Shown: in pieces, positions 12,084-35,663 of the stretch | Position numbering within the stretch: position 1 is the first letter of the stretch | Layout: every line of letters starts with the position of its first letter | Origin: Camelus dromedarius | Lineage: Eukaryota | NCBI RefSeq assembly: GCF_036321535.1 | Contig: NC_087471.1 | Location: 930,001-994,000, forward strand | Reading direction: 5' to 3' | Length of the DNA: 64,000 nt | Translations under genes and position numbers: made by a program | The notes under the pieces: generated by a model | The model's input: only the letters and a program-made list of their open reading frames with translations | Told to the model about the DNA's origin: nothing | Database searches by the model: none

Positions 12084-13117
12084 GAGTGATTATTTAACTT
12101 CGCTGGGGCCTCTGCCTGTCTCGGGCTAGTCAGCGGTCCCCTCGTCCTGATCTGGGACTTCGGGGCATCGTCTCTGAACGGAAGGGGGCCGAGCAGGGAG
12201 AAGCTCGCTGCGCCCAGACCCACGCCTCCTGGGTCTCACAGCAGTGACTGCTGAGTGTCAGGCCCTTGGCGGCCCCGTTGCTGACCCGCCTCGTCCAGCC
12301 GCCCGCGTGCGTGTCACGTGGGAGATGGCGGGGACAGACTCTCTGCTCTGTGCTTACCAAGCCAGCAGGGCATTGCGTGGGCCTTGAAAACGCTGAGTTG
12401 GATGTGGTCACGCCAAGTGCACCCCTGAGAGTGAGTGGCCTGTGACGAGCAGATAAACGTGGGACAGCGAGTCGGAAACGGCCCGCTGCGTGGCCGGGGC
12501 CGGGAGTGAGGCGGGGGCCGTCTGTGCAGCACTGATCTGTCCTCTCATCCGGGACCCCCGTTGTTCCTAGTGTGCGCCTGCTCTTCCGTATACTTTCTGA
12601 GCTGTTTAAACGGGTGACGTGACAACTGGTTGACCGAGCCCTGCGTCCCGTCCTCGGGTTTCTCCCCCAGGAGGAACCAGCGCGGTCTTCCCTGCCCACC
12701 CTGTGTCAGCGTAGCAAGTCGACTGTAGTAGGTTAGACAGTCAGAGATTACTTGAGAATAAAGGTTCCAAAATGAACTTGTAGGGAGAAAACTAAACAGC
12801 TGTCAGCTGCACCCAGCAACCTAGAATTATAAACGTCTCTGCTGGAGACGCAGGGCTGCCGGAGCGCCCGAGGCCTCGGGCCGAGGGGTGTGTGCAGGCG
12901 AGCTGAGCGCAGGGGTGGGGTTTTAACATGGCCTTCGGCTCCCCAGGGAGTCTGCTGCTGGTGTGACTGACCGCCTGGTTGCCCTGGTCATGCTGCCACT
13001 TTCCCGGCAGGGGCCACCACTGCAGGAGTCACGGCGACCCGCGCTGTGCTGACGGCGCCGCGGGGCCCACGGGGCCTCCCGGGTACAAACACGCCTCACG
13101 CAGCAGACGTAGAACTC

Positions 13118-13123
13118 TTTATT
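13118..13123 (-). terminator. Poly(A) signal for the SEMA4D alternative (distal) isoform
   Basis: tttatt on + strand (AATAAA on -), followed on - by the GU-rich element gcgtgtttgt. Confidence 0.7.
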
Positions 13124-14421
13124 TTTTTCCAACAATTCGGAGAATCAGAAGTCAACCTCGTAACCACATTCCCCACCCGCGCACGGCCCGTCGACGTGAC
13201 GGTGACCTAGTGTTTCAGTGCTGTGGGGCGTGGAGAAGGGGGGCTGACAGCAGCAGGAAAGGGCCCAGCTCAGTGCAGCTCGCTCAGCAGCAGTGGTGGC
13301 TGGAGCCACATGCGCACAGGAGTCACGGCGAGAGCTGAGGGAGGTTTACCAAAAACTATGTCCCTGGCTGTGATGCTCTGTGGGCCAGATCGGCATCTGT
13401 TGGCAAGACGGGCGGCGCCTGGGCAGGAGGGGAGAGGGGTAAGGCGGGATGGGCCGCCAGGGCGACCTGAACCCCACAGCCAGCCGTCCTCAGAGCCTTG
13501 CTCACATCGGATCCTGGAGGTGACTGGCCGGAAGTGTGTGCTACTCCGTAGGAAGGGGCCTAGCTTCAGAACAAGGGGGTCTGGAAAGAGGCTGCGTCAT
13601 GAGGCTGAGGAGACCGGGGTCACAGGAGAAGCAGCGCTTTAATGGAAGTTTTGGTTTTACAGTAGACTGCATTCCGGTAAAAGCTGTCATTCCACAAGCA
13701 GACGTCTGCAAGCCGCTGGGCGGAGCAGCGTTAGGCCTGGGCCCTCGTGCTCACACGTGCACACGCGCGGGCACGCACACACACACGGTCCTGGCTGCAG
13801 TGTGGACCGGAGGCCCCGCAGCTCAGCCTCATGGGCTCGCCCCGCTGTGAGAGGAGGGGCCGCGGCCGGGGACACGTGCACAGCTGGCCCGCTGGCTCTT
13901 CCCTGCGGGCGAGCCTGGTGCGCAGGCTGCAGCCGCGGGGACAGGTGCACGCTCGGACCTCTAGTGAGCAGGCCGGAACTCAACGGTCTCCCCACGTCCG
14001 TGTCAGCTTCCGGGTTTGCACCTTCGCCCTCAGGGTTTAAGGGAAATTCCTGTCATTTGGAGCCTCACCTCCCCTGTCGCTGGGCGGCGTGTCTTGGAGT
14101 CACGTGGCTAAGTGAAGGCGGCGAGAAGCAGCCGTCAGGAGGGGCCACCACTGCCAGCTGCTCCCGGGGGCGGCCTGCTTGTGTGATCACATGGGGTGAC
14201 CTGAGGAGGAGACAGAAGCCATCACACACGCTACTGTCTGAAGCAGTTTCTGTTTGTAGCTTGTTAGTCGCCTTGGTTTCCTGCGTCTGCCAGACAGGCC
14301 CTCCTGTTCCCTCTAAGCACCTAAATAAGAAGGAGACATTCCGGCAACTGTCGCAGGTCCACTCGGGGCTCCAAGTTCTCTGCGCAGCCCGACTGCAGTG
14401 TGTGGCAGGTGGTGGCAGTGT

Positions 14422-14459
14422 GGGCTTGGGCTTGGGCTTGGGCTTGGGCTTGGGGTGGG
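14422..14459 (+). repeat. (GGGCTT)5 GGGG T GGG hexamer repeat, G-quadruplex-prone
   Basis: Read directly; seven G-tracts. Confidence 0.9.
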
Positions 14460-14475
14460 CACTGCCTCCTGGTGC

Positions 14476-14502
14476 TCAGAAGGCGTCCTGGCCGCAGCTT
14501 TC
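14476..14502 (-). CDS. SEMA4D: SEMA4D alternative isoform, last coding exon (ESCGQDAF*)
   Basis: ttctttcag| acceptor, phase 0, TGA at 14476-14478; resembles human isoform-2 end ESCSKDTL (from memory). Confidence 0.85.
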   Translation of the reverse strand, partial: ESCGQDAF

Positions 14503-14818
14503 CTGAAAGAACAACGGGGTCTTTTAGGTCCTGGAGCATCAGGCGGGCCCGAGTCCCTGTCCTGTGTGCTCCCCGCGGGGCCTAGGGTCTGAGCTCTGTC
14601 TGGGGTTAGGGTGGCCGTGGGGGCATCTTGCCAGAACCAGCTGGTTCTGCCTGACTTGGGAATTCCTGATTCCCCTCCCAGGATTGGCCCTGGATGGGAG
14701 GGGTGCGGGTTTCAGAAAGCAGAAGTGCTCGGTGGGCCTGGGGAGGCACCAGCAGGACGGGCCCAGAGAGGGGCGGCCGTCCCGCCAGACCCCGGCCCCC
14801 CCGGGCCCGGCCACGTAC

Positions 14819-14916
14819 CCACGCCTTCCTCCAGCTCTGCACCATGCGGTCGTGCTCCCCGACCACGGCCCTCCAGGCGGCAAGCTCTCTGGTCCACCTC
14901 TCTTGGTGGGTCGCCT
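14819..14916 (-). CDS. SEMA4D: SEMA4D alternative isoform exon (Trp-rich helix)
   Basis: tcttgcag| acceptor, TGG|gtacgt donor, 98 nt; EATHQERWTRELAAWRAVVGEHDRMVQSWRKAW. Confidence 0.9.
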
Positions 14917-15904
14917 CTGCAAGACAGAGCAGGGCTCAGGTCTCAGCTCCACTGGCCTTGGTGGCCCTCGGGTGCCCACCGTGCTGCACCTCTGCTGGGC
15001 TGAGCTGGGCCTTGGCAGCCGAGTGGGCTCAGGGAAGGTGTTTACCCCTTGGGCCTCACCTTCCTGGCTGCGGGGGCTTCAACAGAGAGCCTCCTCCACC
15101 CAGCCTTCCTTGGGCCACCAGCACCCCAGGCGGCCGCTCCCCAGGGCCCCGCTGGCCCTGTCCTCCGTATCTCAGGGGCATTTCCATCCAGCCTGGAGGG
15201 GACTCACTTCCCACGCCTCGAGGGGCAATGCAGACACCCTGGGGTTCAGGGTGGGCAGGGGCTGGGAGCTGAGGCCCGGAAAGCAGCTCGGTAACCAGGG
15301 CTGGCATCCTGTTACATCACGTGCTGCTCGCTCCGCGCAGCGGCCGTGTGAGTCTGGTCCTGAGGTTTGAGGAGGAGCGACTGCAGGGCTGTCCGGGTGG
15401 CACCAGCCTGACGGCCACGTGCTCTCTTTGTAAACACAGAAATGCGCGGCAGCGTTGCTTGGGACCGCGGCTCACATCGCTGGTCTCAGAAATGGGTTCC
15501 AAGAACCTGAGCCCTTCAGACGGGAAGCAGGACTCACACCCGGGGCAGAACTGAGCGGGCCCAGCGCTCATGGTACCCACACAGCCAGCCCTCAGCCGGC
15601 GCCGCCCCCCAGGGTGACAGCAGGGAGCTGGCGGGGCTCTGTAGGAGGGCCCTTGGTGGCCTGAGCTCCACGGGGCCCTGCAGGGGCTCCTGACTCAGGA
15701 CGCACAGGGCTGGGGCAGTCTGGGTCCCTGGAGGCCCATTTTATCGTCTAACACGTCCTCCAACACCGCCTGTGCCTTCGCAAACATGGGGGCGGGGGGA
15801 GGACGGAAAATACTGAGGCGCCTTAACTGCTTGCGTCTTTTAGCCCCTCTCCTGGCTTCTGTGTCTCCTGTCCGCACGGTGCCTTGGGTGGACCCTTGCC
15901 TGCC

Positions 15905-15985
15905 ATCAAGTCAAGCCCTGTGCTTGCGCGCTTGTGGGCTGCGTGACCTTGGGCGAGTCCCTTAACCTTCATCGTCAGTGTGTGG
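15905..15985 (+). mobile_element. Degraded MIR core
   Basis: gctgcgtgaccttgggcgagtcccttaaccttc resembles the MIR core gctgtgtgaccttgggcaagttacttaacctct. Confidence 0.5.
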
Positions 15986-17753
15986 GGTTCACCAAGTTAG
16001 ATGACAGTTGGGCTCAAACTGCCTCGTTGCTTCTCTGGCTGTTACTACTTCGCTGTTTGCTGGCAGCATCGTTCACTTGGCTTCTGGGTAAGACGTCACA
16101 ATTTCTAAGTCTCACACGGGTATTCATTTTATCCTGACAGCAACAGGCAAGGGCACTTTATAGAAAAGAAGGAAATGGGGGTTCTGGGTGGGAGGAAGTA
16201 TTTGAAATTTCCTTTTCTCTGAAACCCCCACTTAAAAGGACAAGGGAGCTTTTAAAATGTGTACTTGGTGTATAAACTCTTGAAAATGGACAGAGGATAG
16301 GGGAGGAAGCAGTGGAAGCTGGAAGCTGAGAAGCGGGGGGACCAGTGGAAACTGTCGCAGCAGATGCAGCAGACCCGGGAGGCAGAGCCCTGCCCGGCAG
16401 CGGGAGGCAGAGGGGTGGCCCCTCTCGGGGGCACTCGGGAGCCTGCCTCAGCCTGGCGCGCCTGCTGCCCCGGGCGTGGGCTGCCGCCAGAGGCCCTGCA
16501 CACGGCAGCTTCTCTGCTAGCGCGTCCGGGAATCACGAGGTGTCCCCGGAACGGGCTCCCAGGTGATCAGATGCTGCCCAAGGCAACACCTGGGCTGGGA
16601 GGGGCCTCCCGAGAGGGTGCTCTGTGCCCGTCTCTTAAATGTACCCGGGCAGTCGCTCCCGAGACTTCTGAGCGAGACTAAGGCAAAACCACCAAAAAGG
16701 GGCAACTGGGAGGGAAAAGAAAACAGGGAAGTCCTCAGTGACCTCAGAGCAGAGCGGATGGCCACACGCAGGACAAGAGGAGGACGGGGTCCTGACAGAA
16801 CAGAACGAAAACCCCTGCGTAGTGAAAATGTGAGGCTGGGGTGGGGACTCACTACAGGGGGCGCAGCGGAGGGAGGGCAGCTAAAGGGTGGGTGGGCCGG
16901 GAGAGGAGACGGACGGAGGGCCAGCCCGGGAGCCCAGCACCCGGGCAGGTAGTTCCAGAAAGAGCAGCGAATGACGTGCGTGCGGCACACGTCCGAGAGT
17001 TGCAGGCCGGGGGCTGTGAAATGCGGCGGGCCCCGCCCGAGAGGTCCGCGCCCGCTCGGGGCTCAGAGGGACAGTGATCAGGCGGGCTCACAGGCAGCCT
17101 CCGGGGCCGGAGGACGGAGCCAGCCGCACGCGCTGGGAGTATCTTCAGGCCAGAACTGTCTACGTGGCTGAAGATGGAGGAAAGACGTAGGCTCTGGGGA
17201 CACTGACTCCCCCAGACGCTATGTCTGAGTGTGGCCACAGGCACCCCACAAAACAGCGGAGGAGGAAATCAAAAAAGGAAGGGACACCGGGAACTAGGCC
17301 ACGAGATCCAGCGTCAGAGGAGCGGACTCTCCAGCCCCAGCAGGAAGGGCCAGTCCAAGGAGGCAGAGCGTTTTGGGGGGGTGACAATGGGGACACCAGG
17401 GTGCCTGCAGGGGTCGGGCACTTAGCCGCAGAGCCCGGTGTGGAATTCCTGGTAACTGAGCAAGCGAGGCGGCACGGGGGTTCCCTACGTGGGAAGCAGG
17501 CATGTGGAGGGATGGGTTCCGGGCCTCAGCCATCCCCGTGACGTAACAGACTCCTCCTGGGCGGACGGGGGATTAGCAGCCGTTGTGCGTGCATGTGTGT
17601 GCGTTCACACGTGCGTGTGCACCGGGGAGGCAGGCAGCGGGAAGCTAACTCATTCGTCTCAGCGAACACCAGCAGGTCATCCCTACTGAAATGTCAGCGT
17701 GTGGGGCCGCTGCCAGAGAGACGGGGGGGGCACTGAGGAGGCGGGGGACTCAC

Positions 17754-17963
17754 CGTGTCCCGTCACGGCGATGTGCACCCGGGAGGTCTGGCTCCCCGCC
17801 GTGGACAGCGCAGAGCAGCGGTACTCGGCGCCCTCCCGGACGGCGTCTCGCAGCCAGCTGAGCACGAGGGCCCGGCCGTCGGGCAGCGCGTGGGTCTGCG
17901 TGGGGACGCACGCCTCCAGCGCGCGCCCATTCTTCTCCCAGAGGAAGTGGACGTCCGCGGGAC
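17754..17963 (-). CDS. SEMA4D: SEMA4D alternative isoform exon (second half of alternative Ig domain)
   Basis: cccccag| acceptor, G|gtgagt donor, 210 nt, phase 1-1; GPADVHFLWEKNG...LPDGRALVLSWL...AEYRCSAL. Confidence 0.92.
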
Positions 17964-20900
17964 CTGGGGGCACACAGACCACCTTCAGCCCCGGGACCCC
18001 TACCTAGGCCCCAGGGGAGCCACCCTGGCACAGGGGCGGGGGGTGGAGCCACCCAGATTAGGTGCCTCGTCCCAGCAGGGCCCGAAGTGACTGGGTGGGT
18101 GGCTTTCCGGTAAGTCTCTGTCCTTCCCCTGGAGGGGGCCTGGGAGGGGTTCCCCTCTGTGGTCCCCAGTGGCCCTGGGAGAAAAGGGTGCGGACACCTC
18201 AGTGCCCTGTGCCCCACGGCTCCCTGCTCCTTGACCTCACTTGGGCGCCTTTTTCAAAGCACACTTGCATGGCCATGTCCCCCGGACGTGCTGGGCTCCT
18301 AGGTGCACCCTTTTCCTTCCTCCCCAGGCTGTGCGCCCCGTGGAGTGCCTGGTGGCCGGGCTCTGGGGCAGAGGGTATGGGCCAGGAACTTAGCTGCCCA
18401 CCTGGCCCTGCTGCCACCGCTTTGAGCCTAGAGCTCTGTCTGCACAGGGCCACTCGCTCTCCCTGGGGCACCAAGAGGCCAGGGCAAGCCTGCCCCGCTG
18501 GCCGGGTCACTGTGGCCGGGGAGCAGGACTGCCACCAGGAGCCCCAGGCTGGGCCAGGGGACGGGCGCCGGGTGCCAGGAAGGGCTGATGGCCTGTCTTT
18601 TCCACATAAGGACTTGGAGGAGAACGGACCCGAGGGAAGGGCCTGGCAGAAGCCCCTCCCCAAGCACAGCGGGGTCCTGTGCCGGAGCCCTGCCTGGGCC
18701 CCATGTTCATCTCAGTGGCCGGGGGTGGGGGCCGTGGAGCCCAGTGCACGGAGAGCCCGGAGCAGGACTGGGCTCTGGTCCCAAGGCCAGAAGCTGCCTC
18801 AGCGAGCACCTCCTTGGTGGGGCCCCTTCCCCAACCCTAGAGGGTGGCCAGGTGAGCCTGGGGTGTCAGGCTCCACGCCGGGTCCCCGGACTGTGCTGAG
18901 ACGGGCCCAACTCCCGTCCTTAGGAGCGAACCAGGTGGGTCACCTCCACCTTGACCTGCTTACATACTGGCTTCCACTCAGAAGGGCTGAAGACAGGACC
19001 CAGCTGACACCACTAGGCTCCTCCCTGGGGCGTGTGCAGACCCCCGGTGAGCTGAGCTAGGACCGAGCAAAGGCGGGGCTGGGCCCTAGACTGGAGCAGC
19101 AGCCTGGCCAGCCCCGGACGCCCTGGGGTCAGAGCCAGGCAGGAGGGGATGCAGGCCCTCCCCATTGTGTGCGCGGAGGGGGGCGCGCAGCCCCTCTGTG
19201 CCCGCTGCTCCCAGTCGCGGACAGGGTGGTGCTGGGGCCAGGCCCTGACAGCCCACGCCCCTGCTCCCCCCACACCTGTGCGGGGCGGGCACCCCAACAG
19301 TGTGGACTGGGGGGCCCTCTGGCCGCCTTGCCCAGGGACCCAGCTCCCTGACAAACGCCCGCTGTTCCGAGTGGACTGCCCCACGCGGGGGGAAGGCCGA
19401 CCTCAACCAGAGCAGCCGCGCCTGATGGCCATGTGCCTGAGAATCAGCTTTCAGAAGTAGATCCCACCCCAGCCGCCCGACAGCCAGGGACTGACACACG
19501 ACGGGGTTTCGTGCGGGACGGTCGGTGGACTCGATCTATCTGTGGCTGGAGTTCACTGAGCAGGAAGAGAGAATGGTAGACGTGAAGGATTAAACAGCAC
19601 GGAGAGCCGCTGGCGTCCGGGTGTGCGCGTGTCGGGGGGCACGTGCCGGCGGGGAGCTGGGCGAGGGGCCGGGTGGTGGGCAGAGGGGCTCTGTCACGTG
19701 CTGGGCTTTTTACAGGGGGAGAGGCTTCTCGTTTAGATGACTTCTGATGGATTCCCAGCCGGTCAGGTCCCTGCGCAGCCAGTCTGGCACCGTTCACCTT
19801 TGCCTGGTCCCTTCGTCAGTGACTGACCATGTTCAGGACCGGCAGAGAACCTTCCTCCCAAAGGAGAGTCAGACCCTTGAAGCGGACAATCCCAGGAATG
19901 GGTCCTGAGGCCACGAGCGGGACCCACAGGAGCCACTGAAGCCGTTTGCTAGTGGGAAGTTGGGGAGCGTCCCACAAGGGGTCCCCTAAATGATGTGGTG
20001 CCCCCCCCCCGCCTGGGTGCCTGTCAGTCGGGCAGAGGTATCTCCTCCCGTGAACTGCATGCACCTGGTGACACCGCGTGCTGTTCAGTCACTCCCTGGC
20101 CGATGGGCATCTCGGTGGCGTCTGACTTTGAAAGCTGACACTCGTGAGGCGTGATTGTTCACGGACGTGAGACCTGTCTCTGAGCAGCCACTGAGGTCAG
20201 TTCTGGAAAGGCCCCGGCGCCCCCCTCGTCCCCCGGCCCTGTCCAGGGGTGACGAGCACCGAGACCCACCCCCTAGGCTGGGGGCCGCAGTCGCAGGAGC
20301 GTCTGGAAAGTTCTCCTGACCGTCGCCGGGACGAGACCCGGATGGCCTGAGCTGGGGAGGGCTCGTCACCCCGAACCACATGGGCCAGGACCCCTCGGGA
20401 GCAAAGCTCCTCAGACGCCCGGTTCCCGGGGTCTGCACCGCCATCACGAGGACCGTGTCAGGCACTGTTAAATGTGCTGTAAATGTGTATTTAACCGCAG
20501 TAAAACGTTAGAAATGTGAAAGTACTTACGTTCCATTTCTTTTCTAAAACTATCCAACTCATTCTGAATGCAGAGGTTAGAGAGAGAGGGAAAGTGAAAG
20601 TTAAAACCGGTCAGCAGGGCCACCACCCTGGACACTGGGGACCCCGGGTAGCAGGGGCCTGGGCCCATCCCTCGCAGCCGCCTCGGGCTGGCCTCTGCAG
20701 GGCGGGGCGGCTGGGGTCTCGGGGCCCAGCCCCCACCTCGGGACTCCATCCTGCCCCACCCCCGGCCCCACACGGTCTGAGGACACCCGCCGGGGTGGGG
20801 TGTGATAAAACCAGAACCCCTCTGAACAATGGCTTCTCCCCAAGGGAAGCCGATCCATCCTAGGGGCAGAGGGCCTGACAGCCCGCAGCTGGAGGGGACC

Positions 20901-22124
20901 GATGGGGTGCACCCAGCCCTCAGCCCACATCCTGACCGGTGCCCCCACTGCCGTCTGTGCAGCTCCAGGCAGGCGAGCCTTCCTCCAGGCACCCTCCTGC
21001 ATGTGGTCAACTCTGACCCCAGAGCCAGCTGCCCCAGGGCCAGCACCCCCCCCATGCCCAGGGTCCTGCCAGCTACTCCAGTGCACCCCTGGGGGGCTGT
21101 TCTCTGAGCACCCGAGGCTGCACGCACCAAGGATGCTCATTGCGGATCCCCAGGACCAGGCACTCCCCTGCGCGGCCGAGACCCCACAACCATATGGGAA
21201 TCAAGAGGGCCTGGCCGGCCCGGAGGGCAAGGGGTCTCCCAGGTCTGCCACCCCGGTGCCATCGGCTCTCCTCCCCGTCACCTCTCAGGCCCTCCCTCAG
21301 GTGCTGGGGCCCCGTGGTCAGCTGAAGAGTCACCCCCAAATATCCAAGTCCTCATCCCTAGGCCCTTGTGTGGCCAAAGGTGCTTCCAGACTAGTGGGCA
21401 GTGCATGGAGGTGACCTGGTCGGCCCCGCCCCGACGCGGAGGGGTGTCCCAACTCCTCCTGGAAAACTCACAAGTCGGCTCTCCGCCGTGGCTCAGCCCT
21501 GGCCTTCCAGGGGTCCTGACGCGCACGCTGGCAGCAGCGGTCACTGCAGGAGGCCCAGGTCTGCCTTCTGACGCCAGCCGCTCACAGAGCTCTGCTTTCT
21601 AACGTCTTGGTTAAGACATGAGCGGCCATCCAGAACCTGAGCATCCAATACCACCTACATGTAGGGGATCTGCCCTCAGCTTTAAAGGTGACGCAGGTCT
21701 CACCGCGACACAGGGAGGGAGGGCCCTTGGAGACCGCACTTTGGTTAAGGAGTCACATACGTCTCTTTCTGCGCTACGTCAGTGCGTGTGCAGACACATG
21801 ACATGGCTGGCACGTCCGTGTACACCGCCGCGCCGTCCTTCATTGGCCGTTACCTGCCAGGCGCACCGCGCCCCCTTCCCCTGCTCTTTGCACGCCGCAG
21901 GTGCTGCACTTTCTGCAGGTGGAAGGTTTGCGGCCACGCAGCGCCGGGCCGGTCTGCCGGTGCCGTTTTCCCAACAGCGTCTCTTCACTTCCTGCCTCTG
22001 TCACATTTTGATGATTCTTACAGTATTTCAGACTTTTTCATTATTGCGGTGACTGTGATTGGAGACCTTTGCTGTTAGCACTTCAGCCTGCTAAAAGCTC
22101 AGCCGACGACTGGCATGTTTTAGT

Positions 22125-22265
22125 GGTGTTTTGGGTTTTTTTGGGGGGGGGGATTGGGTTTATTTGTTTATTTTTAATTTTTTTTTTTAGTGGAGGTACT
22201 GGGGATTGAACCCAGGACCTTGTGCGTGCTAAACACGAGCTCTACCACTGAGCTATACCCTCCCC
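22125..22265 (-). mobile_element. Vic-1-like tRNA-derived SINE
   Basis: ggaggtactggggattgaacccaggacc...ctaccactgagctataccctcccc with T-rich tail on + strand. Confidence 0.9.
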
Positions 22266-22279
22266 GCAAACATTCGGGG

Positions 22280-22436
22280 TTTTGTGTGTTTATTTTTTGT
22301 TGTTTTTGTTTGTTTTGGGGGGTAATTGGGTTTATTTTTATTATTTTTTAAAATTTAACTGGAGGGACTGGGGATCGAACCCATGACCTCCTGCACGCTA
22401 AGCACGCACTCTACCACTGAGCTGTACCTTCGCCCC
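22280..22436 (-). mobile_element. Vic-1-like tRNA-derived SINE (second, tandem)
   Basis: ggagggactggggatcgaacccatgacc...ctaccactgagctgtaccttcgccc with T-rich tail. Confidence 0.88.
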
Positions 22437-22808
22437 TTTAGCGGTATTTCCTAAGGTACGTACACTATTTTTTTAGATGTGACGCTGTTGCACACGTCAC
22501 AGACTGCAGCATAGCACCACCTAACTTCCACGTGCACCGGGAAACCGGAGCGTCCGTGTGCCTCTCTGTTGTGCCTGGACCTGCACTCAGCACCTCCGAG
22601 GTCTGCTCAGGACCCCTTCGCTCTGCTTGTCAGTGTTTTCCTGACTCTCCACTGTGCATGTACATCGCTCGCAAATGGAAGACCGCCAGCAGTCAGGAGG
22701 GCCACTCCGGGGCCCGGAGTCCGTCCTCCCCGCGCGCAAGCCTCGGAGCCTGTGAGCGGAAGCGTGGCCCCAAGGTGCGGTGCCCAGGGTGCTCTGGACC
22801 AAAAACAA

Positions 22809-22834
22809 ACACACACACACACACACACACACAC
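22809..22834 (+). repeat. (AC)13 microsatellite
   Basis: Read directly. Confidence 0.95.
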
Positions 22835-24530
22835 GTCCACACAAAACACAGACATACCGGCGCACACAGGTACACACATGCGTGCAGTTATGTCAGCACG
22901 CAAAGCGCACATGTACCCACGTTAACGGGGGTACATGCAGACACAGAGGCGCGCACACACTCCACCAGGAAGATCTGGAGACAGAGAAGCCCCTTGGGGT
23001 CCCTGCGCTCTGAGGCCAGGCCCGCTGTGAGATGCTGGCCCAGCTTCAGCGCAGCCAGAGCTTGAGCCTCTGTGACCGGTCCCATGAACCCAGCTCTACA
23101 GAGACACACAGGCCGAGGCCACATAGGGTAGACAGGGAGCAAGCCAGACAGGGAGGTGCCTGCAGGCAGAGGCAGGAACCACCCCTCCTGCAGAGCTGCA
23201 GCCTGACCTGAAACTTGACCTTCAGTTCTGGTGCCTTCCGGGGCTCGGGGGAGGGGACGGCCAGAGACGCCGCCTTTGTAAACACCGCCCCCCAACACCA
23301 CGATGCACGGTGACCAGCACTGGCTGGTGGGCTGTGGAGGGCAGCACCTGCCTAGATCCGGACGTGTCCCTGGGGACAGCCAACCCAGGGGCCTGCGGCA
23401 GGACGGGCCTGGGGCAGGGCCTGCATGGGGCCTCGGACAGAAGGGACGTGCTCTCATCCCCTGTCCCTTGACAGCAGGCGGGAAGAGCATGTTTCCCGAG
23501 GGCAGGCGTGGAACCGCCCCATCGAGGGCTGGTCCCTGCGAGCCCGTCAGCAGGGTCCCCGAGGACCTGGTGAACTTAGCACCGAGCCTCCCCGCTTTCC
23601 CAGTGCCAAGGAGGTCCCCAGGTGTGGCAGTGGAGGACGCTGCAGCCGCAGGACAGGCCTGGAGGGTGGAGTACATACCTCAGTGCCCGCCCTGAGGGAG
23701 TCAGGCGGCCCAGGTGACCCGGGGCCACACAGCCGCCCCTCACACGTCTGTCTGCACAACATCCCACTCACAGCACCTGCCCATCACCTGGAGCCCATGC
23801 AGAGCCACCAGCGGCCAACATGCAGAGCCACGGTGGACAGAGGTCCATGAGCCGACTCCACAGGGGGACCGGCAGCAGCGTGACACTCGCGGCTCCTCCC
23901 AGCTTGCCCCAAAGCTCCAAGAAGGGAAGAAACCTATCTGTCCTCCCTCCTCCCTGACTCCTCTCCCCGCTCTGAGCAGAGGACGAGCCCCAGGCCTGGG
24001 ACGGGCTGTGTGCTTTCTCTCTGCCGCCACAGACGAGCGAGAAGCCGGCAGCCGGGGGACCAGGGCCGCCCGCGCTGCCCAAAGCCCGGGACACATTCAG
24101 AATGCGGGTTTGGCCGCCGTCCCATCCCAGTATATCCAACACAGAGCAAACCCCCCGCGCCCGAGGGGGCAGGCTAGACTCTCGGTCTTTTCTGTGTTTA
24201 AACATCCTGAAACAAGTCATTCAAACAATTCCCACTTGGCTGGCTCTGGAGTTAATTTTTGAAATCTCCAGATGCACAAAGACCCACACACATCAAACCC
24301 AAACGGTCGGCCGACACAGAAGTGCCCCCCAGGCCAGCCGCGGCCCGGCAGCTGGTGCTGGCGGATACAGTTTGATGGGCACACGGCCGCGCCCGTCTTC
24401 ACGAGGGGCGAGCTGAGTAATTGCAATGAAACTACGTTCCCTGAAGCCTCAGCGGGTTCAGCCCTTCGTGGAAAACGCTGGTTGGGCCCTGCCGCCCCCA
24501 CCCCCCGCCCCGCACAAGTGCCCTGCTCAC

Positions 24531-24740
24531 CTGTGGCCTGGCAGAAGAGGTGGAAGGTCCCCAGGGCGTGCACGTGCTGGGCCTGGTCGCTGAGGAAGGG
24601 CGGCAGCAAGGTGACCCGCGGGCGGCTGTCGGGACCCGCGCCCGAGGCCGGCCAGGGGCTTCGGGGAGAGGAAGGTGAGTCGGGGCCCAGACAGGACAGG
24701 GAAGAGGACCCCGGAGGGGGGAAGGGCAGAGGAGATGAGG
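24531..24740 (-). CDS. SEMA4D: SEMA4D alternative isoform exon (Pro/Ser linker plus first half of alternative Ig domain)
   Basis: tgtctcgcag| acceptor, G|gtgagc donor, 210 nt, phase 1-1, compatible with the phase-1 donor at 27960; ASSPLPFPPP...RPRVTLLPPFLSDQAQHVHALGTFHLFCQAT. Confidence 0.9.
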
Positions 24741-24920: not shown

Positions 24921-24926
24921 TTTATT
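24921..24926 (-). terminator. Poly(A) signal of the canonical SEMA4D 3'UTR (a second candidate at 25063-25068)
   Basis: AATAAA on - strand at the end of a U-rich 3'UTR, about 1.3 kb after the stop. Confidence 0.75.
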
Positions 24927-25697
24927 CGGTTACTTTCCAAATGTATACAATTCAAAGTAGAAAAATAAAAACAAAGTAAATCTTACAAAACACAAATGTT
25001 TACACCAAAACGGTCGAATCCATCATGCTGGAAGATGACACTGTCCACACACACACACAGAGTTTATTGCTCTTTGCCACGGAAAAGAAAGGCTCCTCTT
25101 GTGGGCGTCCGGAAAGCAGGAGGTGGAGTGTCACACCGGTGGCGGGAGACTGCTACCCGCTTGCACCTTTAAAGATGGGGCCGGGCTGGGCCGGTCTGCG
25201 CGGTGACCTCTGGGGGGGGCCTGTGGTCACCGGCCCGGCCCCCAGCTCTCTTCCAGTCGTGGTCAGCTCGTTACGCCAAGTGGAGAGTCTGGGCGGCCGG
25301 GGGCATGAGGCAGAAGCGAAAGGAAGGGAGACGTTCAGACGACCGAGACATCCCGGCGAACATCCGTCTGTCTGGACAGGAGGTTCTGACCGGTGGCCGT
25401 GGGCATCGGATTGTGAAAACGCGTGTCCCCTCAGCTCTGGGCCAGCCCGGCTCTCCCAGGGCACACGGGGCCCCATCCCTCCCTCGACACCCCGCCTGGC
25501 GCTGCATCCTCCACAACCTTCTCCTCCTCCAAAGACTTAAAACAAGAGAAAAAAGGAACAGAAAGAAAATCTCTGAAAACGGTGCTTCCCTCAAGAATAA
25601 AATTAAAAAAAAACCCAAAAAGGAAGGATGTTTAAGAGACGGTTTTGTCTACACTTCTAAAAGCAGAAAAGAACGCATTTAAGCAAAAGCAAGTTTA

Positions 25698-25705
25698 TCC
25701 CTGAG
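25698..25705 (-). promoter_or_regulatory. miR-125/lin-4 family 8mer site (CTCAGGGA) in SEMA4D 3'UTR
   Basis: tccctgag on + strand equals CTCAGGGA on the mRNA, complementary to the miR-125 seed plus A1. Confidence 0.65.
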
Positions 25706-26206
25706 AATCTCAAGCAACGTAAGCCATACCTTACCCTACCAGACGACAGAACCGAGATGTGCATCTCCTAAATATTAAACACATCTGCTTCAGTGATCAA
25801 AAAAAAAGACCTAACATAACAACACAATTAAAACCAAATCCTAAAAAAGTAATTACGTGGGGGAAAAACGGTCCGTGCCAACCTGGAAAACAGGTGATAA
25901 GTTACCAATCTGATAAACGAAGAACGTCATTTCCAATCTGGAAGTAAGCTATCCTGCAGTTGCCGCCGTGAGGAGGGCCGCCCTCCCACCACAGCGCGGG
26001 CTCGTCCCCAAGCGCTCTGACCCACCGAGGGAGGCCGCACACGATGCGCAGCGTTTTCCGAAAGGACAAAGAGAAACCAAGTCACAAGCGCGACCCAAGA
26101 GAAAAAGACACAGAAGACGGAGGTCTGCAGACGACGGCTACCTACGAGGCACTGGGCGGGGGACGGAACTGGCCACACGGGGACATCCCTGCGCGCGCTG
26201 GGCGCC

Positions 26207-27135
26207 TCAGTCCCCGTCCGCGTCCGAGTCGGCAAACTGCAGCTCGCACTTGACGTCGAACGGCTTGTCCCGGCCCGGGAGCTCGTCCATCCTCTGCGAG
26301 TCCTCCCTGTCGGTGGGCACCCTGCTGGCCATGGTGTCCTGCTCTGTCTCGTAGCCGGTGTCCAGGGCCGGCTTGGGCTGCCCTCCGTTCTGCTGGGAGA
26401 AGCTGCCCTGCTCCACCAGCGTCTCCTTCCCGCTCTGCTCGCAGTCGGAGAAGTCCAGCGCGGGCTTCTTCTTCCCGAGGAACACGGCCGAGCGGAACTT
26501 CAGGCACTGCCCGGGCAGGTAGCCCTTGTAGCAGTTGTAGGTCAGGAGGCAGAGGAAGAGGACGAAGAAGAGGAGGCAGAGGGACATGAAGAGGCGGTTG
26601 TCACTGGACTTGAGATACATCGTCTTCTCCGAGTGGACCTGGGGGACCGTGTTGATGACGATCTTTGGTTCACAGGACGTGCTGGTGGGCGCCGCGGGGC
26701 GGGACGGGGGGCTGACGGCACTGGGCGTGCTGACCCGCACGGCTGGGGTCTGGGGAGGGGAGCCTTGGGTAGGCCCCAGCGACATTTTGGGGGTGATCCT
26801 GCCACCTTCTGTCCGTGTGGCCGGCGGGGCAGAGGCCGCCGGGGTCCGCGGGACCACCTTGACCTCCAGGACGTGCTTGGCCACCACCTGCAAGACGGTC
26901 TTGTTTCTGACCCTCTCCTCCGACAGGCACTGGTACACCCCACTGTCTCCTTCCGACAGGTCGAAGATGAGCAAGTTCTTCCTGCCCACCAGGCTGTACT
27001 TGGGGCTCTCGACCTTGAGCACGCTGTCCCGGAACTTCCACACCGCCCGGGCCAGGTTGGACTTTTGGGAGCACTTGAGTTCTGCTGTGCCCCCACGCTT
27101 GAAAAAATGCTGCCGGTAACTTTCTTTAACTTTAT
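26207..27135 (-). CDS. SEMA4D: Semaphorin-4D terminal coding exon (Ig domain, stalk, TM, cytoplasmic tail)
   Basis: gttccag| acceptor; DKVKESYRQHFFK...YQC...LFMSLCLLFFVLFLCLLTY...FADSDADGD*, 929 nt. Confidence 0.98.
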
Positions 27136-27960: not shown

Positions 27961-28004
27961 CGGGGCAAGCGGACGTGTCTCCGCTCATTTCCTGAATCAA
28001 CTCC
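27961..28004 (-). CDS. SEMA4D: Semaphorin-4D coding exon 13
   Basis: 44 nt, ttgcag| and G|gtaagt; RELIQEMSGDTSACP. Confidence 0.96.
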
Positions 28005-28096: not shown

Positions 28097-28269
28097 CTGC
28101 TGGGGCTGTCGGTCTGGTGCAGGGTGACGCAGGCGGCCGCGGCCGGGCTCCAGGCGCAGTAGGGGTCCCGGGCCAGCACGCAGTCCTCGCAGGTGCCGTG
28201 CTGTCCGCAGAAGGCCACGGGGGCCTGCACCACGCCCGAGTTGGAACCGGCATAGATGAACCTCCTGCC
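28097..28269 (-). CDS. SEMA4D: Semaphorin-4D coding exon 12 (PSI domain)
   Basis: 173 nt; [40 protein letters not shown]. Confidence 0.97.
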
Positions 28270-30597
28270 CTGTGAGTGTGGAACAGATGAGAACGGTGGG
28301 CACGGGGTGTAGCCTCCAGCGTGACGGGGCGACCGGTGCTGCTCTAGCTCGGGGGCGGAGGGGGATGATGAAGCATCCCCCGAGGTTCTGGAGGAGAAGG
28401 TGGAGCGAGGCCCGGGTGGATCCAAGACTAATCTGAACCACAGCATTGTAATGATACAGGCTAACTCAGGGCACCCAGGGCCGTGGTGCGAGTCCCGCCC
28501 TCCCTGGCCCAAGTGCCCCCATCACCCTACCCACCAGCAGGGCGCTGCGCTCCTCCTCCGCGGGCAGGGGCTGCTCAGGCCCGCGGTGCATGGGAGGCCC
28601 CCACCAGCCTGGCACTCCCGGCCGCACCACGGGCCAGGGCCAGAGGACACCACCTGCGAACCCCGCCTCGCGCCTGCCACATGCGAGCACCAGTACACAG
28701 AAGGCCCGTGCCCGTGTCTGAACCTGGCGGGGCCGCGGTGCGGGAGGCGTGCCCACGTTTACGGGAGATGAATGCTGCTGGGGAGATGGACAGCCACGCT
28801 CCAAGCAGGGAGCAAAAAGCAGGATCCTTCTGGAACTCCGGGCACTCGGGCTACCGCCGCCAGCGCCCACGGCACCGGCGGGCGGCTGCGCACGCAGGCA
28901 GGGCTGGACCGAGGGCCCCACGGAGCGTGCCGAGGCCCGTGGCACAGCCAGGGCGGGCAGCCCAGGCCCCAGGAGATTTCCGTCTCCTCTGCTGGCGAGC
29001 CCGTTTCACTCAAGTTCCAGATGGGCCTTCAGGTTAACGTCAAGAGACTCCCCAGTCTACACAGAGCTCAGTGTTTTCCACTCGGATGAGATGCAGACTC
29101 TGTCCCCAGAGGACGCATTCTGAATCGACTTCAGAGTCCGGCTGGAACTCAGAGTCCTTGCTGTTACCCCAGAGCCCCTGGCCTGCGATGCCTCCCTTCC
29201 CGGGGGTCACAGACCCACCCTGCGGAGGGACAGTCAAGGGAGGGCAGCCCCTGCAGTGAATGGACAAGCGGCTGAGAGCCAGGCCCAGGGCCGGCCTGTC
29301 CACGGCGGCAGAGGCCCGGGCAGATGAGGGCACGCGAGTCCCATATTCACACAGGAGGGATGATGTCCCAGGTCACAGCCAGGATTATGTGGCTCACAGA
29401 GGTGAGGGAGCACCTCCCAGGGTGACAGGCCAGCGGGGCTCCCGGAGGAACCCTAGCACGGGCCCGGACACTCACGCAGAGCCCACCAGGGGGCCCGGGC
29501 TGCCAGGGGAGCCCACGGGCACCTCCCCCCGGGAGGAGGCCCTCCCCAGCCCGGCTCCCGCCCCCGCCCCCGCCCCGCAGCCGGCACAGCCCGGCTCCTG
29601 CACCCAGCAGGGCGGGCCAAGCCCCCATGAAGCAGAGCCGACGGCGCCTTGCCGACTCCCGCAGACGGGGGAGGGAAGGGGACGGGAAAGCTGCTTGGAT
29701 CCCACAGCAGTGCCCGCTGTGGGCCAGGCCACGGGCAGATGTGACGAGTCAGCGGGCGTGGGGCCGGGTGTCTGTGGAGCCTCAAGGTCGCCCACAAATT
29801 AGTGGTGGCGACAGTAGGGGCTGAACGTGGCCCCCAGACTCTTCAGCCGCCCCCTCCAGGAGCTGGGGCTTAGCTCCCCATCCCCTGGGGAACACAGGGC
29901 GTGGGGACAGTGCAGAAAAAGAAATCAGTAACTCTGAGAAGTCACGTTGAGGCCACGTCCCTGAGACAGTGGTCATCTCCCCAAACGCTCACCCCCAACC
30001 TAAACACAACACTAGAGGCACCCAAACTGAAGGGTGTCCGCAGAGCATGACCCGTTCTGTCCTGAGTGTCACAGCCACCCAGACGAGGGCGGACGGGTAG
30101 CTGTGCGGGCCGGAGGGGACTGAGGAGAGGAGCCGGAGGCCGCACGGGGCCCTGGAGCCTGAAGGCAGGTGGTGGGACATGGGTTCTGGGGCCTGGAGGG
30201 GATTCGGGGTGCGGTGCCAGCAGACCTCCTTGGGTTGGCAGGTGCACGCTGGACTCTCTGCACCATCATCCCAACTCTTATGAGAGAAAACCACCTGGCC
30301 GGGCGCCATGAGAGATCTGCTGGGAACGCATGTTCCCCAGCCCTCTCCCCGTGGGCCCCACGTGTGTCTCCGCCCTCCAGCTGACTACGTGCCCTGCTGG
30401 AGCCCTGGGCCCACACTGTCTCGTCTCCGTCCCTGCACACACAGGCACATGATCGTGGGGGGATGTGGCTGGAGCTGGAGGAGCACCTGCTGAAGCAACT
30501 CTTCCCTCCCCTTTGCTGCACAGGCTGCCCCTCACCATCCAAGAGTGTCCTTGGGGACAGCAGACGCATCTGGCTCCGTGGCCCAGGGCACACCTGC

Positions 30598-31075
30598 CAT
30601 GTACACACAGAGATGTCACACGGCACTAGTCACAACAGCCCAGGGGTGGAGGCAACCCAAGCATCCCTCAGTGGGTGAGTAAACAAGATGCGGTGTGTGC
30701 ACATGATGGAATATTACTCAGCCCCGAAAAGGAAAGAAATCCCATCAATTGCAATGGCATGGATAAACCTTTAGGACAATATGCCAGAGGAAACAAGCCA
30801 GTCACAAAAGGACAAACGCTGTAGGATTCCACTGAAGTGAGGTTCTTAGTCAAACACCCAGAGATGGAAAGCAGAACGGGGCTGGGGAACGGGAAGAAGG
30901 GGGAGTCAGTGTTCAACGGGGACAGGGCTTCAGTTTGGAAGGATGAAAAAGCTCTGGAGGTGGACGGGGATGATGGCTGCACGGCGTGAATGCACTTGGC
31001 GCTGCTGAACTGTACACACGAAACAACCAAAACGGCAAAATTTATCTGATGCGTATTTACCACACAAAAAACCCC
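30598..31075 (+). mobile_element. L1MB-type 3' end fragment
   Basis: atggaatattactcagcc...gccagtcacaaaaggacaaa...gggcttcagtttggaaggatgaaaaagctctggaggtgga...tatttaccacac. Confidence 0.8.
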
Positions 31076-32707: not shown

Positions 32708-32988
32708 CAGGGCAAACCCAGCCCGCTGGCTGTCTCTGCACAGCCCACCAGCTAACAAACGGGTTCACATTTTTAAATGGTTGAAGGAAAGTCAGAAGAA
32801 TGACATTCAGTGACACGTGAGAATTCCATGAACTGCAAAGCTCGGCGCCCGTGCGTGAGGCTTTGCGGGAATGTAACGGGGCTCGCCGGCCTGCAGACCG
32901 CCCGTGGCTGCTCCAGGCTGCAACAGCCCGGCCCCTGGGGCCTCGAATAGTCACGCTTGGTCCTGTAGAGAAAAGCCTGCGGCCCTAG
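32708..32988 (+). mobile_element. MER58B-like hAT-Charlie DNA transposon
   Basis: cagggcaaac...acatttttaaatggttg...gtgacacgtgagaattccatgaa...agaaaagcctgcggccctag matches the MER58B layout (from memory). Confidence 0.75.
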
Positions 32989-33349
32989 AGCAGGAGGAAG
33001 TGCCCTGCTGTTACTCAGAGGACGGTTTTCTGCAGTGATGAGGCGGTGCACGGGTGGCGCACCGGCCGGTGGGGGCTCGGCCTCACCGAGTCCCGGACAC
33101 GAGGAAGTGCTTTCACAGGCCAGTGCCGACGCGCCCCCAGCGCTGGTCCCGACAGCTCAGTGAGGCTCTGTCAGCTTTTAGGACAGTTGCCGTCCCTCCA
33201 CCCCAAGCCCCACAGCTCATGGAAGGACCTTCTGTAAGAGCCTGAAGGTCGGCTCATCTGGGCCAGACAGACGGCGGGGACTGCCCGGCCCAGCCCAGCC
33301 TGTGGCTGCTGAGACACAGGGCCACCCACCCAGCCGCCCGTCACTTTAC

Positions 33350-35579: not shown

Positions 35580-35663
35580 CTGGGGGGGAGGGGTGGTGTG
35601 ACTGCCCTGGGTCGGGGGGATGCGGAGAAGACAGCCCCGCCCCCGCCCGCCCCGGGCACTCAC

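What the first reader, a model, noticed from the sequence alone, without database searches (positions are those of the whole stretch)
14476..24740. SEMA4D alternative 3' cassette swaps in a C1-set-like Ig domain and removes the membrane anchor
Seen: four intact exons with correct phases (210, 210, 98 and 27 nt) splice from donor 27960 and give a 733-aa protein: signal peptide, sema, PSI, new Ig domain, helix, no TM. The Ig domain has RPRVTLLPP (compare constant-domain PSVTLFPP), LFC, FLW 12 residues later, LPDGRALVLSWL (compare CH3 DSDGSFFLYSKL) and YRC 53 residues after the first Cys. It also has an extra Cys and is split by a phase-1 intron between strands B and C. Established: C1-set domains are nearly restricted to Ig, TCR, MHC, tapasin and SIRP-type molecules, and soluble CD100 is usually attributed to proteolytic shedding. 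A similar human isoform (isoform 2/C9orf164) is annotated as far as I recall, but I know of no functional study. Inference: a conserved, genetically encoded secreted semaphorin, possibly formed by capture of a remnant neighbouring C1-Ig gene.
Basis: partly seen in the sequence, partly recalled or inferred. Interest (0 to 1): 0.75.

Follow-up and report, generated by a model that had tools for sequence, protein, structure and literature searches.

The report
Known secreted SEMA4D splice form
The four exons are real.

Summary
Seventeen minus-strand exons, all with AG/GT sites, splice into a 2,202-nt reading frame. Its 733-aa product is 100% identical to NCBI's "semaphorin-4D isoform X2" of Camelus dromedarius. 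The last four exons (210, 210, 98 and 27 nt) replace the canonical Ig-stalk-TM-cytoplasmic exon.

The 181-aa tail has no hydrophobic segment. It consists of a disordered Pro/Ser linker, one Ig domain and a 38-residue amphipathic helix that ends in a conserved Cys.

This isoform is already known:
- it is annotated in more than 100 mammals, including named mouse isoforms 3 and 4;
- it is annotated in frogs, turtles, crocodilians and a bird;
- full-length spliced transcripts exist in sheep and mouse RNA assemblies;
- a 2022 paper reports the human "last-exon" mRNA on polysomes, with a matching smaller protein band.

The cassette also lies directly downstream of sema4d in an electric eel, and short gene models carrying it occur across many teleosts. 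It is therefore at least as old as bony vertebrates. Pairwise dN/dS is 0.18-0.28.

The C1-set reading is not supported. Pfam, a profile search of solved structures and exhaustive structural alignment all favour I-set. Only Foldseek's ranking puts C1 domains first, and those alignments are poor. Recent capture of a neighbouring C1-Ig gene is not supported either.

The parts
28097..47570 (-). Coding exons 1-12 of SEMA4D (signal peptide, sema domain, first PSI exon). The ATG is at 47570.
   Evidence: A guided splice reconstruction reproduces P0194 exactly, and every junction is AG/GT. tblastn of P0194 maps to these exons.
27961..28004 (-). Last shared exon (44 nt, end of PSI, ...SGDTSACP plus one base). 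Its donor GT at 27960-27959 is the branch point between the two 3' ends.
24921..27135 (-). Canonical composite terminal exon: semaphorin-type Ig, stalk, TM segment and cytoplasmic tail. The stop is at 26209-26207, and the 3' UTR carries AATAAA at 25068 and 24926. The alternative isoform skips this exon and bypasses its poly(A) site.
   Evidence: ORF ending in DSDADGD. Pfam ig/Ig_3/I-set hits. TM segment with KD 2.63. Poly(A) hexamers. The sheep transcript skips it.
26805..26806 (-). Candidate internal donor (GAAG|GTGGCA, phase 1) inside the canonical exon. If used, it would give the longer Sema-PSI-Ig-cassette form (838-844 aa) annotated in several other species.
   Evidence: sequence. P0089 and the other 838-844-aa models show this architecture. 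The GT is not conserved in sheep, which has GAAG|GC. Its use in camel was not tested.
24531..24740 (-). Cassette exon A (210 nt): the Pro/Ser-rich linker (tail residues 1-40) and strands A, A' and B of the Ig domain, up to ...LFCQATG.
   Evidence: 100% identical to P0194. AF2 gives pLDDT <50 for residues 1-38.
17754..17963 (-). Cassette exon B (210 nt): strands C to G of the Ig domain (WEKNG ... EYRC ... VHIAV).
   Evidence: An exhaustive HMMER search with it finds the orthologues.
14819..14916 (-). Cassette exon C (98 nt): the amphipathic helix, with heptad 'a' positions W148, W155, H162 and W169.
   Evidence: AF2 models a helix at 141-178.
13100..14502 (-). Terminal exon D. The coding part is 14502-14476 (ESCGQDAF, stop). 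The 3' UTR then runs to about 13,100, with AATAAA at 13123.
   Evidence: The 3' UTR of the sheep transcript L004 aligns down to 13457, with 251 nt more beyond that. The exon's 3' end is inferred, not mapped.

Best explanation
This is the dromedary copy of a known and very old alternative 3' end of SEMA4D.

After the last PSI exon, the transcript has two choices. It can splice into the large composite terminal exon, which encodes the semaphorin-type Ig, stalk, TM segment and cytoplasmic tail and is polyadenylated near 24.9-25.1 kb. Or it can skip that exon and its poly(A) site and splice to four distal exons.

The second choice gives a 733-aa protein: signal peptide, sema domain, PSI, a roughly 40-residue disordered Pro/Ser linker, one I-set Ig domain, and a 38-residue amphipathic helix ending in ...WESC plus 5 residues. 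It has no membrane anchor, so it should be secreted.

Shown here: exon structure, identity with the annotated isoform, absence of a TM segment, I-set classification, conservation from teleosts to mammals, purifying selection, and full-length spliced transcripts in sheep and mouse.

Inferred, about 0.7: the protein is secreted and still acts as a plexin-B/CD72 ligand, because the sema-PSI part is unchanged.

Inferred, about 0.35: the conserved stripe W148-W155-H162-W169-C176 forms a dimer or partner interface. In this reading Cys176 makes an intermolecular disulfide that replaces the stalk cysteine of the membrane form. The stalk cysteine's role is recalled from memory, not checked here.
For: Exons and product:
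- Exons, phases and the 733-aa product match P0194 exactly.

Annotation in other species:
- The same architecture (about 725-738 aa) carries semaphorin-4D isoform names in more than 100 mammals, including mouse 'isoform 3/4 precursor'.
- It is also annotated in anurans, turtles, crocodilians and Rhea.
- The Xenopus X2 model has the same PSI-to-cassette junction...CP|ASSP.

Transcripts:
- A 4,028-nt sheep RNA-assembly contig encodes the whole isoform. It maps to the window's exons in the order PSI, A, B, C, D and skips the canonical exon.
- Fifteen mouse transcript contigs, shown for six different runs, encode the 733-aa form.

Fish:
- In an electric eel the cassette lies 41 nt downstream of the end of the sema4d gene model, on the same strand, followed by a CKS gene.
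- The eel has a phase-1-compatible acceptor (polypyrimidine fraction 0.85) and a phase-1 PSI donor.
- Short gene models carrying the cassette occur across many teleosts.

Selection:
- Tail dN/dS is 0.28 (camel-sheep), 0.20 (camel-mouse) and 0.18 (sheep-mouse).
- For comparison, the canonical last exon gives 0.25 and sema-PSI gives 0.09.

No anchor:
- Maximum KD19 is 0.68 in the tail and 2.63 in the canonical TM segment.

I-set classification:
- Pfam.
- Profile against solved structures: RPTPsigma Ig1 scores 41 bits in one stretch, IgG CH3 about 32 bits.
- Structural alignment: MuSK Ig3 Z 12.8 at 1.6 A over 91 residues, then titin, telokin, DSCAM and Lrig3.
- AF2 pLDDT is above 90 over the Ig domain.
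- The motif E-x-A-x-Y-x-C fits the V/I-type tyrosine corner.

Helix and cysteines:
- Heptad register and cysteine census.

Literature:
- In Jurkat cells both the human IPA (membrane) and LE mRNAs are on polysomes, and a smaller protein band is attributed to the LE isoform (PMC8909304).
- SEMA4D shows one of the largest tissue switches between exon skipping and intronic polyadenylation in GTEx, with ranges 0.92 and 0.96 (PMC13187750).
Against: - No camel RNA evidence.
- No protein-level evidence was obtained here.
- The camel tail itself stays below every Pfam curated cut-off.
- Foldseek's own ranking lists C1-set domains first: beta-2-microglobulin and MHC class II, E about 1e-5.
- The gap in Z between the best I-set and the best C1 match is under 2 units.
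- For PMC13187750, I infer rather than know that their SEMA4D 'poison exon' is the canonical TM exon.
- A PSI-to-cassette junction in fish is shown only as compatible gene structure, not as a transcript.
Confidence: 0.85

Rival explanations
1. The new domain is a C1-set-like constant domain of the antibody/TCR/MHC type, taken over from a decayed neighbouring C1-Ig gene between SECISBP2 and SEMA4D.
For: - Foldseek ranks beta-2-microglobulin and MHC class II beta-2 domains first.
- The tail profile hits IgG CH3 at E about 1e-6.
- Pfam C1-set matches 16 of 27 orthologues at E<=0.1.
- Some sequence habits look like CH3: LLPP in strand A, WEKNG, DG..L.SWL.
- Many annotations model the cassette as a separate small gene.
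Against: - The Foldseek C1 matches have rmsd 4.4-4.6 A, while I-set matches align at 1.6-2.4 A.
- C1-set never reaches Pfam's 21-bit cut-off. I-set reaches its cut-off of 23.7 bits in several orthologues, with up to 27.2 bits.
- From PP to the first Cys is 19 residues, which by my own count is I-like (about 20-21) rather than C1-like (about 14).
- The E-to-F spacing and the E-x-A-x-Y-x-C motif are of V/I type.
- The domain is split over two exons, as in NCAM-type I-set domains. C1 domains are usually encoded by one exon (established knowledge).
- The cassette already sits behind sema4d in teleosts.
- An exhaustive HMMER search found only cassette orthologues and generic multi-Ig giants, with no donor family.
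Confidence: 0.07
2. The distal exons are transcribed, but the isoform is not a working protein. It would be splicing noise, an NMD substrate, or only a by-product of regulating how much membrane SEMA4D is made.
For:
- One paper treats the locus purely as an NMD/intronic-polyadenylation switch.
- Another states that both human isoforms are membrane-bound (PMC9148012).
Against: - dN/dS is 0.18-0.28, the same as the canonical tail at 0.25.
- The frame is intact, with 18 invariant columns across 27 species from teleosts to mammals.
- The stop codon lies in the last exon, so the transcript is not an NMD target by the 50-nt rule.
- The human mRNA is on polysomes and a protein band is reported.
- The statement in PMC9148012 conflicts with the absence of any hydrophobic segment in the tail.
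Confidence: 0.06
3. The cassette is mainly a separate small gene (the former C9orf164 type) with its own start near exon A. It would make a roughly 180-330-aa Ig-plus-helix protein that is independent of SEMA4D.
For: - Many stand-alone models exist. Examples are the 183-aa 'semaphorin-4D isoform X4/X5' in Peromyscus and the 'uncharacterized LOC' models in elephant, macaque, a snake and electric eel.
- C9orf164 occurs as a gene symbol in three papers in the library.
Against: - The stand-alone models start at different, non-conserved methionines, and the ones I read have no evident signal peptide.
- Exon A keeps a phase-1 acceptor matching the PSI donor from eel to camel.
- Full-length joined transcripts exist.
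- The conserved block begins exactly at the splice junction, ASSP....
Confidence: 0.05

Closest known systems
Human SEMA4D isoform 2 (UniProt Q92854-2) and mouse semaphorin-4D isoforms 3/4; NCBI 'semaphorin-4D isoform X2' of Camelus dromedarius
   Same: Same gene, same splice from the PSI exon to the four distal exons, same tail. The camel model is 100% identical to the window's product. Gorilla and mouse tails are 77% and 74% identical.
   Different: Nothing of substance. The window is simply this isoform's genomic locus.
Shed soluble CD100/SEMA4D (proteolytic release of the ectodomain)
   Same: Both are soluble proteins with the unchanged sema-PSI receptor-binding part.
   Different: The shed form keeps the semaphorin-type Ig and stalk and arises after translation. 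This one is encoded, lacks that Ig, and carries a different I-set Ig plus a helix and a Cys. The two Ig domains are unrelated by BLASTP (E=11).
Class 3 secreted semaphorins (Sema-PSI-Ig-C-terminal tail with a dimerising cysteine; from established knowledge)
   Same: Overall layout: secreted Sema-PSI-Ig followed by a short tail that contains a cysteine.
   Different: The tail here is an acidic/amphipathic Trp-rich helix, not a basic furin-processed tail. The Ig does not match the semaphorin Ig family PF28354, which marks the canonical Ig. It resembles class 3 in layout only and is not a member.
I-set Ig domains of RPTPsigma/delta/LAR Ig1, MuSK Ig3, titin, telokin and Lrig
   Same: These are the best sequence-profile and structural matches: 41 bits, and Z 12.8-11.5 at rmsd 1.6-2.4 A.
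   Different: Identity is only 12-24%, so no specific parent can be named. The domain has SW in strand E and an extra Cys89 in tetrapods.
Switches between a membrane and a secreted form by competing splice and poly(A) choices (IgM mu-m/mu-s, soluble NRP1, sFLT1; from established knowledge)
   Same: One pre-mRNA gives an anchored or a secreted protein, depending on whether an internal terminal exon and its poly(A) site are used.
   Different: The polarity is reversed. Here the proximal site gives the membrane form and the distal exons give the secreted form, and the secreted form gains a folded domain.

Membership tests
SEMA4D alternative 3' isoform (human isoform 2 type) | Splice from the last PSI exon, in phase, to four distal exons downstream of the canonical terminal exon | tested here: met
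   All junctions are AG/GT with phases 1, 1, 1 and 0. The product is identical to P0194.
SEMA4D alternative 3' isoform (human isoform 2 type) | Tail orthologous to the annotated isoform in other species | tested here: met
   70-88% identity to other mammals, 41-56% to birds, reptiles and frogs, and 36-38% to teleosts, with 18 invariant columns.
SEMA4D alternative 3' isoform (human isoform 2 type) | The spliced mRNA exists | tested here: inconclusive
   Met for sheep (L004) and mouse (L005-L010) transcript contigs.
SEMA4D alternative 3' isoform (human isoform 2 type) | No transmembrane segment or GPI-type hydrophobic end | tested here: met
   Maximum KD19 is 0.62-0.81 in tetrapod tails and 2.63 in the canonical TM segment. 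The C-terminus is hydrophilic.
Ig C1-set (PF07654) | Pfam score at or above the curated cut-off (21 bits), and better than other Ig families | tested here: not met
   The camel tail has no hit at E<=0.1. The best orthologue scores 18.0 bits. I-set and Ig_2 always score higher.
Ig C1-set (PF07654) | Closest structural neighbours are C1 domains with a seven-strand ABED/CFG topology | tested here: inconclusive
   Foldseek ranks C1 domains first, but at rmsd 4.4-4.6 A. Exhaustive VIA-align ranks I-set first (rmsd 1.6-2.4 A), and the best C1 domain is rank 50 with Z 11.1 and rmsd 3.2 A. The model has strands at 56-58 (A') and a short bridge at 84-85 (C'). It is a predicted structure, not a solved one.
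Ig C1-set (PF07654) | One exon per domain (usual for Ig/TCR/MHC constant domains; established knowledge) | tested here: not met
   The domain is split by a 6.6-kb phase-1 intron after strand B.
Ig I-set (PF07679) | Pfam score at or above the curated cut-off (23.7 bits) | tested here: inconclusive
   The camel tail scores 18.9 bits, below the cut-off. Orthologues score 25.3-27.2 bits, above it. All 27 of 27 match at E<=0.1, best 1.6e-6.
Ig I-set (PF07679) | Structural neighbours are I-set domains, including the archetype telokin | tested here: met
   MuSK Ig3 has Z 12.8 at 1.6 A over 91 residues. Lrig3 'I-set' has Z 12.3, titin domains Z 12.1-11.5 and telokin Z 11.8-11.9.
Ig I-set (PF07679) | [DE]-x-[GA]-x-Y-x-C before strand F, and a Trp about 12 residues after the first Cys | tested here: met
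   E114-G-A-E-Y118-R-C120. W79 lies 12 residues after C67. Y118, C120, W79 and C67 are invariant.
Class 3 semaphorins | Semaphorin-type Ig (PF28354) followed by a basic C-terminal tail | tested here: not met
   PF28354 is recorded only for models that keep the canonical Ig. The tail helix is not basic.

The most novel reading that the evidence does not exclude
The cassette would be a functional module at least 430 million years old (my dating of the teleost-tetrapod split, from general knowledge). Through the invariant Trp/His/Cys stripe of its helix, it would make secreted Sema4D a covalent dimer or tether it to a partner not yet identified. In the tissues where the canonical exon is skipped, this encoded form, rather than shedding, would supply much of the 'soluble Sema4D' measured in disease studies. 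At least one paper wrongly assumes isoform 2 is membrane-bound.
Probability: 0.3. Interest if true: 0.55.

Novelty: already known. Interest (0 to 1): 0.3.

Why it matters
Soluble SEMA4D is a biomarker and an antibody-drug target, and it is nearly always attributed to proteolytic shedding.

The genome encodes an anchorless form with its own folded tail. That form is as constrained as the membrane tail and is conserved from teleost fish to mammals, yet it has had almost no functional study. Assays and antibodies that do not tell the two forms apart may be misread.

For the scan itself the result is mostly corrective. The exons are a known annotated isoform. The surprising part of the claim, a C1-set domain outside the immune-receptor families, does not hold.

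Tried and rejected
The local BLAST database left out 24901-25049.
- The homodimer fold job on tail residues 41-181, two copies, gave no answer (score 0.01). It is not evidence either way.
- Pfam on single-exon halves gave only a weak I-set hit, E 0.21.
- A bacterial promoter/terminator scan was pointless on this genome.
- An Atlas feature search with the helix alone found nothing usable.
- Exact look-ups of the pig and bat isoforms found no record, and one look-up timed out.
- BLASTP of the cassette Ig against the canonical SEMA4D Ig gave E=11, so the cassette is not a recent duplicate. My first attempt used the wrong frame.
- Supplements of PMC13187750 are not held, so the exact human exon behind its SEMA4D row could not be checked.
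- Full-length fish isoforms could not be retrieved, because the length window of the protein search excludes them when the query is only the tail.


Full report
**What is in the sequence**

SEMA4D lies on the minus strand. The last PSI exon ends at 27961 (...SGDTSACP plus one base), with GT at 27960. The large ORF at 27211-26207 holds the canonical terminal exon. This exon begins at 27135 (phase-1 acceptor) and encodes the semaphorin-type Ig, stalk, TM segment and cytoplasmic tail ending in DSDADGD. AATAAA hexamers in its 3' UTR lie at 25068 and 24926.

Four exons follow downstream:
- A: 24740-24531, 210 nt
- B: 17963-17754, 210 nt
- C: 14916-14819, 98 nt
- D: 14502-14476, 27 nt with TGA

Each is preceded by AG, and exons A-C are followed by GT.

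A guided reconstruction joins 17 coding exons, all with AG/GT, into a 2,202-nt frame with one terminal stop. Its 733-aa product is identical to P0194, NCBI's semaphorin-4D isoform X2 of Camelus dromedarius. There are three extra cysteines rather than one, at tail residues 17, 89 and 176.

**It is a known isoform**

A search with the tail of a ground-squirrel model returned 200 proteins at E<=0.001. The 120 listed are mostly 725-738 aa long and named semaphorin-4D isoform X2/X3/X4, and they come from all major mammalian orders. They include mouse 'isoform 3 precursor' and 'isoform 4 precursor', Camelus bactrianus X4 and gorilla (738 aa).

The same search with the Xenopus X2 tail found the architecture in many anurans, turtles, crocodilians and Rhea. 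The Xenopus junction reads ...CP|ASSP, as in camel.

A second class of models (838-844 aa) keeps the canonical Ig and splices from inside the canonical exon to exon A. Camel has a candidate donor for this, GAAG|GT at 26806/26805. Sheep has GC there.

The literature touches the isoform in four ways:
- UniProt Q92854-2 is cited in PMC9148012. That paper states that both human isoforms are membrane-bound, which conflicts with the tail sequence.
- PMC8909304 separates the human 'IPA' (membrane) and 'LE' mRNAs in Jurkat cells. It finds both on polysomes and attributes a smaller Western band to the LE isoform.
- PMC13187750 lists SEMA4D among the strongest tissue switches between exon skipping and intronic polyadenylation in GTEx, with ranges 0.92 and 0.96 and correlation -0.82. 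I infer, but could not verify, that the exon concerned is the canonical TM exon.
- C9orf164 survives as a symbol in three papers in the library.

**Transcripts**

There is therefore no camel junction evidence.

Indirect evidence is good:
- A 4,028-nt contig from a sheep RNA assembly encodes the whole 735-aa sheep isoform.
- It aligns to the window's exons in the order PSI, A, B, C and then the 3' UTR of D, down to 13457. It skips the canonical exon.
- An AATAAA at 13123 fits the end of exon D.
- Fifteen mouse transcript contigs, shown for six runs, encode the 733-aa mouse isoform.

**Age and constraint**

An exhaustive HMMER search with exon B (1.84 billion representatives) found two kinds of hit. 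The first is short proteins that carry the cassette. The second is giant multi-Ig proteins at 24-35% identity. No other specific family appeared.

Cluster names place the short proteins in camel, marmot, deer mice, a snake, quail, Xenopus, eels, electric eel and Arapaima. A profile search adds many teleost orders, with names such as semaphorin-4D isoform X3 in Lates and Labeo.

In the electric eel the cassette model starts 41 nt after the end of the 906-aa Sema/PSI/Ig gene model. It is on the same strand and is followed by a CKS gene. From memory, CKS2 lies in the same neighbourhood as SEMA4D in human, which would mean conserved synteny; I did not check this here.

The eel exon order is PSI, canonical exon, then A, B, C. 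Exon A has a phase-1-compatible acceptor with a strong pyrimidine tract, and the PSI donor is phase 1. A joined fish transcript was not obtained.

An alignment of 27 tails has 18 invariant columns.

| Comparison | Region | dN/dS (Nei-Gojobori) |
|---|---|---|
| camel-sheep | cassette tail | 0.28 |
| camel-mouse | cassette tail | 0.20 |
| sheep-mouse | cassette tail | 0.18 |
| camel-sheep | canonical last exon | 0.25 |
| sheep-mouse | sema-PSI | 0.09 |

The cassette is thus as constrained as the membrane tail. Its association with sema4d predates the teleost-tetrapod split. That removes the idea of a recent capture. An older capture cannot be excluded, but it has no positive support.

**What kind of Ig domain**

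The evidence is not unanimous, so both sides are given.

For I-set:
- Pfam on the camel tail gives Ig_2 22.6 bits, I-set 18.9 and Ig_3 16.9, with no C1-set hit at E<=0.1.
- Over 27 orthologues, I-set matches 27 (best E 1.6e-6) and C1-set matches 16 (best E 9.7e-4).
- Several orthologues pass the I-set cut-off (25.3-27.2 against 23.7 bits). C1-set never passes its own (at most 18.0 against 21 bits).
- The tail profile against solved structures scores RPTPsigma Ig1 at 41 bits in one stretch and LRIG1 at 26.5 bits for a single domain. Titin's total of 77.9 bits is spread over several domains of 12-18 bits each.
- The AF2 model has pLDDT above 90 across residues 43-138. Its strands are at 44-46, 56-58, 62-71, 76-81, 92-96, 102-111, 116-124 and 127-138.
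- Exhaustive structural alignment ranks MuSK Ig3 first (Z 12.8, 1.6 A over 91 residues). SYG-2, DSCAM, Lrig3 'I-set', titin and telokin follow.
- Re-aligning Foldseek's own top 1000 gives the same order, with the first C1 domain (chicken MHC II) at rank 50, Z 11.1, 3.2 A.
- The E-x-A-x-Y-x-C motif, the 19-residue distance from PP to the first Cys, and the two-exon coding are I-type habits. These last points rest on established knowledge and my own reading.

For C1:
- Foldseek's E-value ranking lists only beta-2-microglobulin and MHC class II domains in its top 50, at E about 1e-5, TM 0.6 and rmsd 4.4-4.6 A.
- IgG CH3 domains score about 32 bits with the profile.

I read the domain as an I-set domain with some CH3-like sequence habits.

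The cassette Ig is also unrelated to the canonical SEMA4D Ig (BLASTP E=11).

**The rest of the tail**

Residues 1-38 are predicted disordered and are rich in Pro and Ser. Residues 141-178 form one helix.

On a heptad grid, the 'a' positions are W148, W155, H162, W169 and C176. Four of these are invariant and C176 is present in 26 of 27 sequences. The 'd' and 'e' positions are V/A, M/L, A/T and L, V, M, W. This agrees with the scan's separate note on this exon (s1-184571).

| Group | Cysteines in the tail | Positions |
|---|---|---|
| Amniotes | 5 | 17, 67, 89, 120, 176 |
| Anurans | 4 | 67, 89, 120, 176 |
| Teleosts | 3 | 67, 120, 176 |

At least in teleosts and amniotes, one cysteine has no partner within the tail. 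This suggests an intermolecular disulfide, but it is inference only. The fold job on two copies gave no answer.

There is no hydrophobic segment. Maximum KD19 is 0.68 in the tail against 2.63 in the canonical TM segment, and the only other hydrophobic stretch is the signal peptide.

**Verdict**

The exons are real and form the annotated anchorless SEMA4D isoform. The mechanism is a choice between a proximal composite terminal exon with its poly(A) site (membrane form) and four distal exons (secreted form).

The C1-set and gene-capture parts of the interpretation are not supported.

Some things appear under-described in the papers I could search. These are the cassette's age, its level of constraint, its I-set-plus-heptad-helix-plus-Cys make-up, and the fact that it cannot be membrane-bound. 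They are modestly interesting, but they do not make the finding new.

Noticed in passing
window 14421-14455 (minus strand): A (CCCAAG)n hexanucleotide microsatellite starts about 20 nt after the stop codon of exon D, in the 3' UTR of the alternative isoform.
   Followed up: no
window 24531-24740, tail residues 1-40: The linker-coding part of exon A has a lower synonymous divergence than the Ig part: camel-sheep dS 0.12 against 0.37, camel-mouse 0.48 against 0.82. This covers only 40 codons. It might reflect constraint at the nucleotide level, close to the bypassed poly(A) site.
   Followed up: no
window 26805-26806: A phase-1 GT inside the canonical exon (GAAG|GTGGCA) could give the longer Sema-PSI-Ig-cassette isoform annotated in squirrels, hamster, dugong and two frogs. 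Sheep has GC at this place.
   Followed up: partly
I worked beside them.
   Followed up: no
window 22780-22880: A (CA)n/(TG)n dinucleotide microsatellite lies in the intron between exons A and B. It shows up as His/Thr and Cys/Val repeat ORFs.
   Followed up: no
L011 (electric eel) 1-25045: The gene order is sema4d, cassette, a CKS gene on the opposite strand, then a 760-aa gene. The cassette is annotated there as a separate 'uncharacterized LOC' gene starting 41 nt after the end of the sema4d model.
   Followed up: partly
PMC9148012 (paper): The paper states that both human SEMA4D isoforms (Q92854-1 and -2) are membrane-bound. The orthologous tails, including gorilla, have no hydrophobic segment.
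   Followed up: partly
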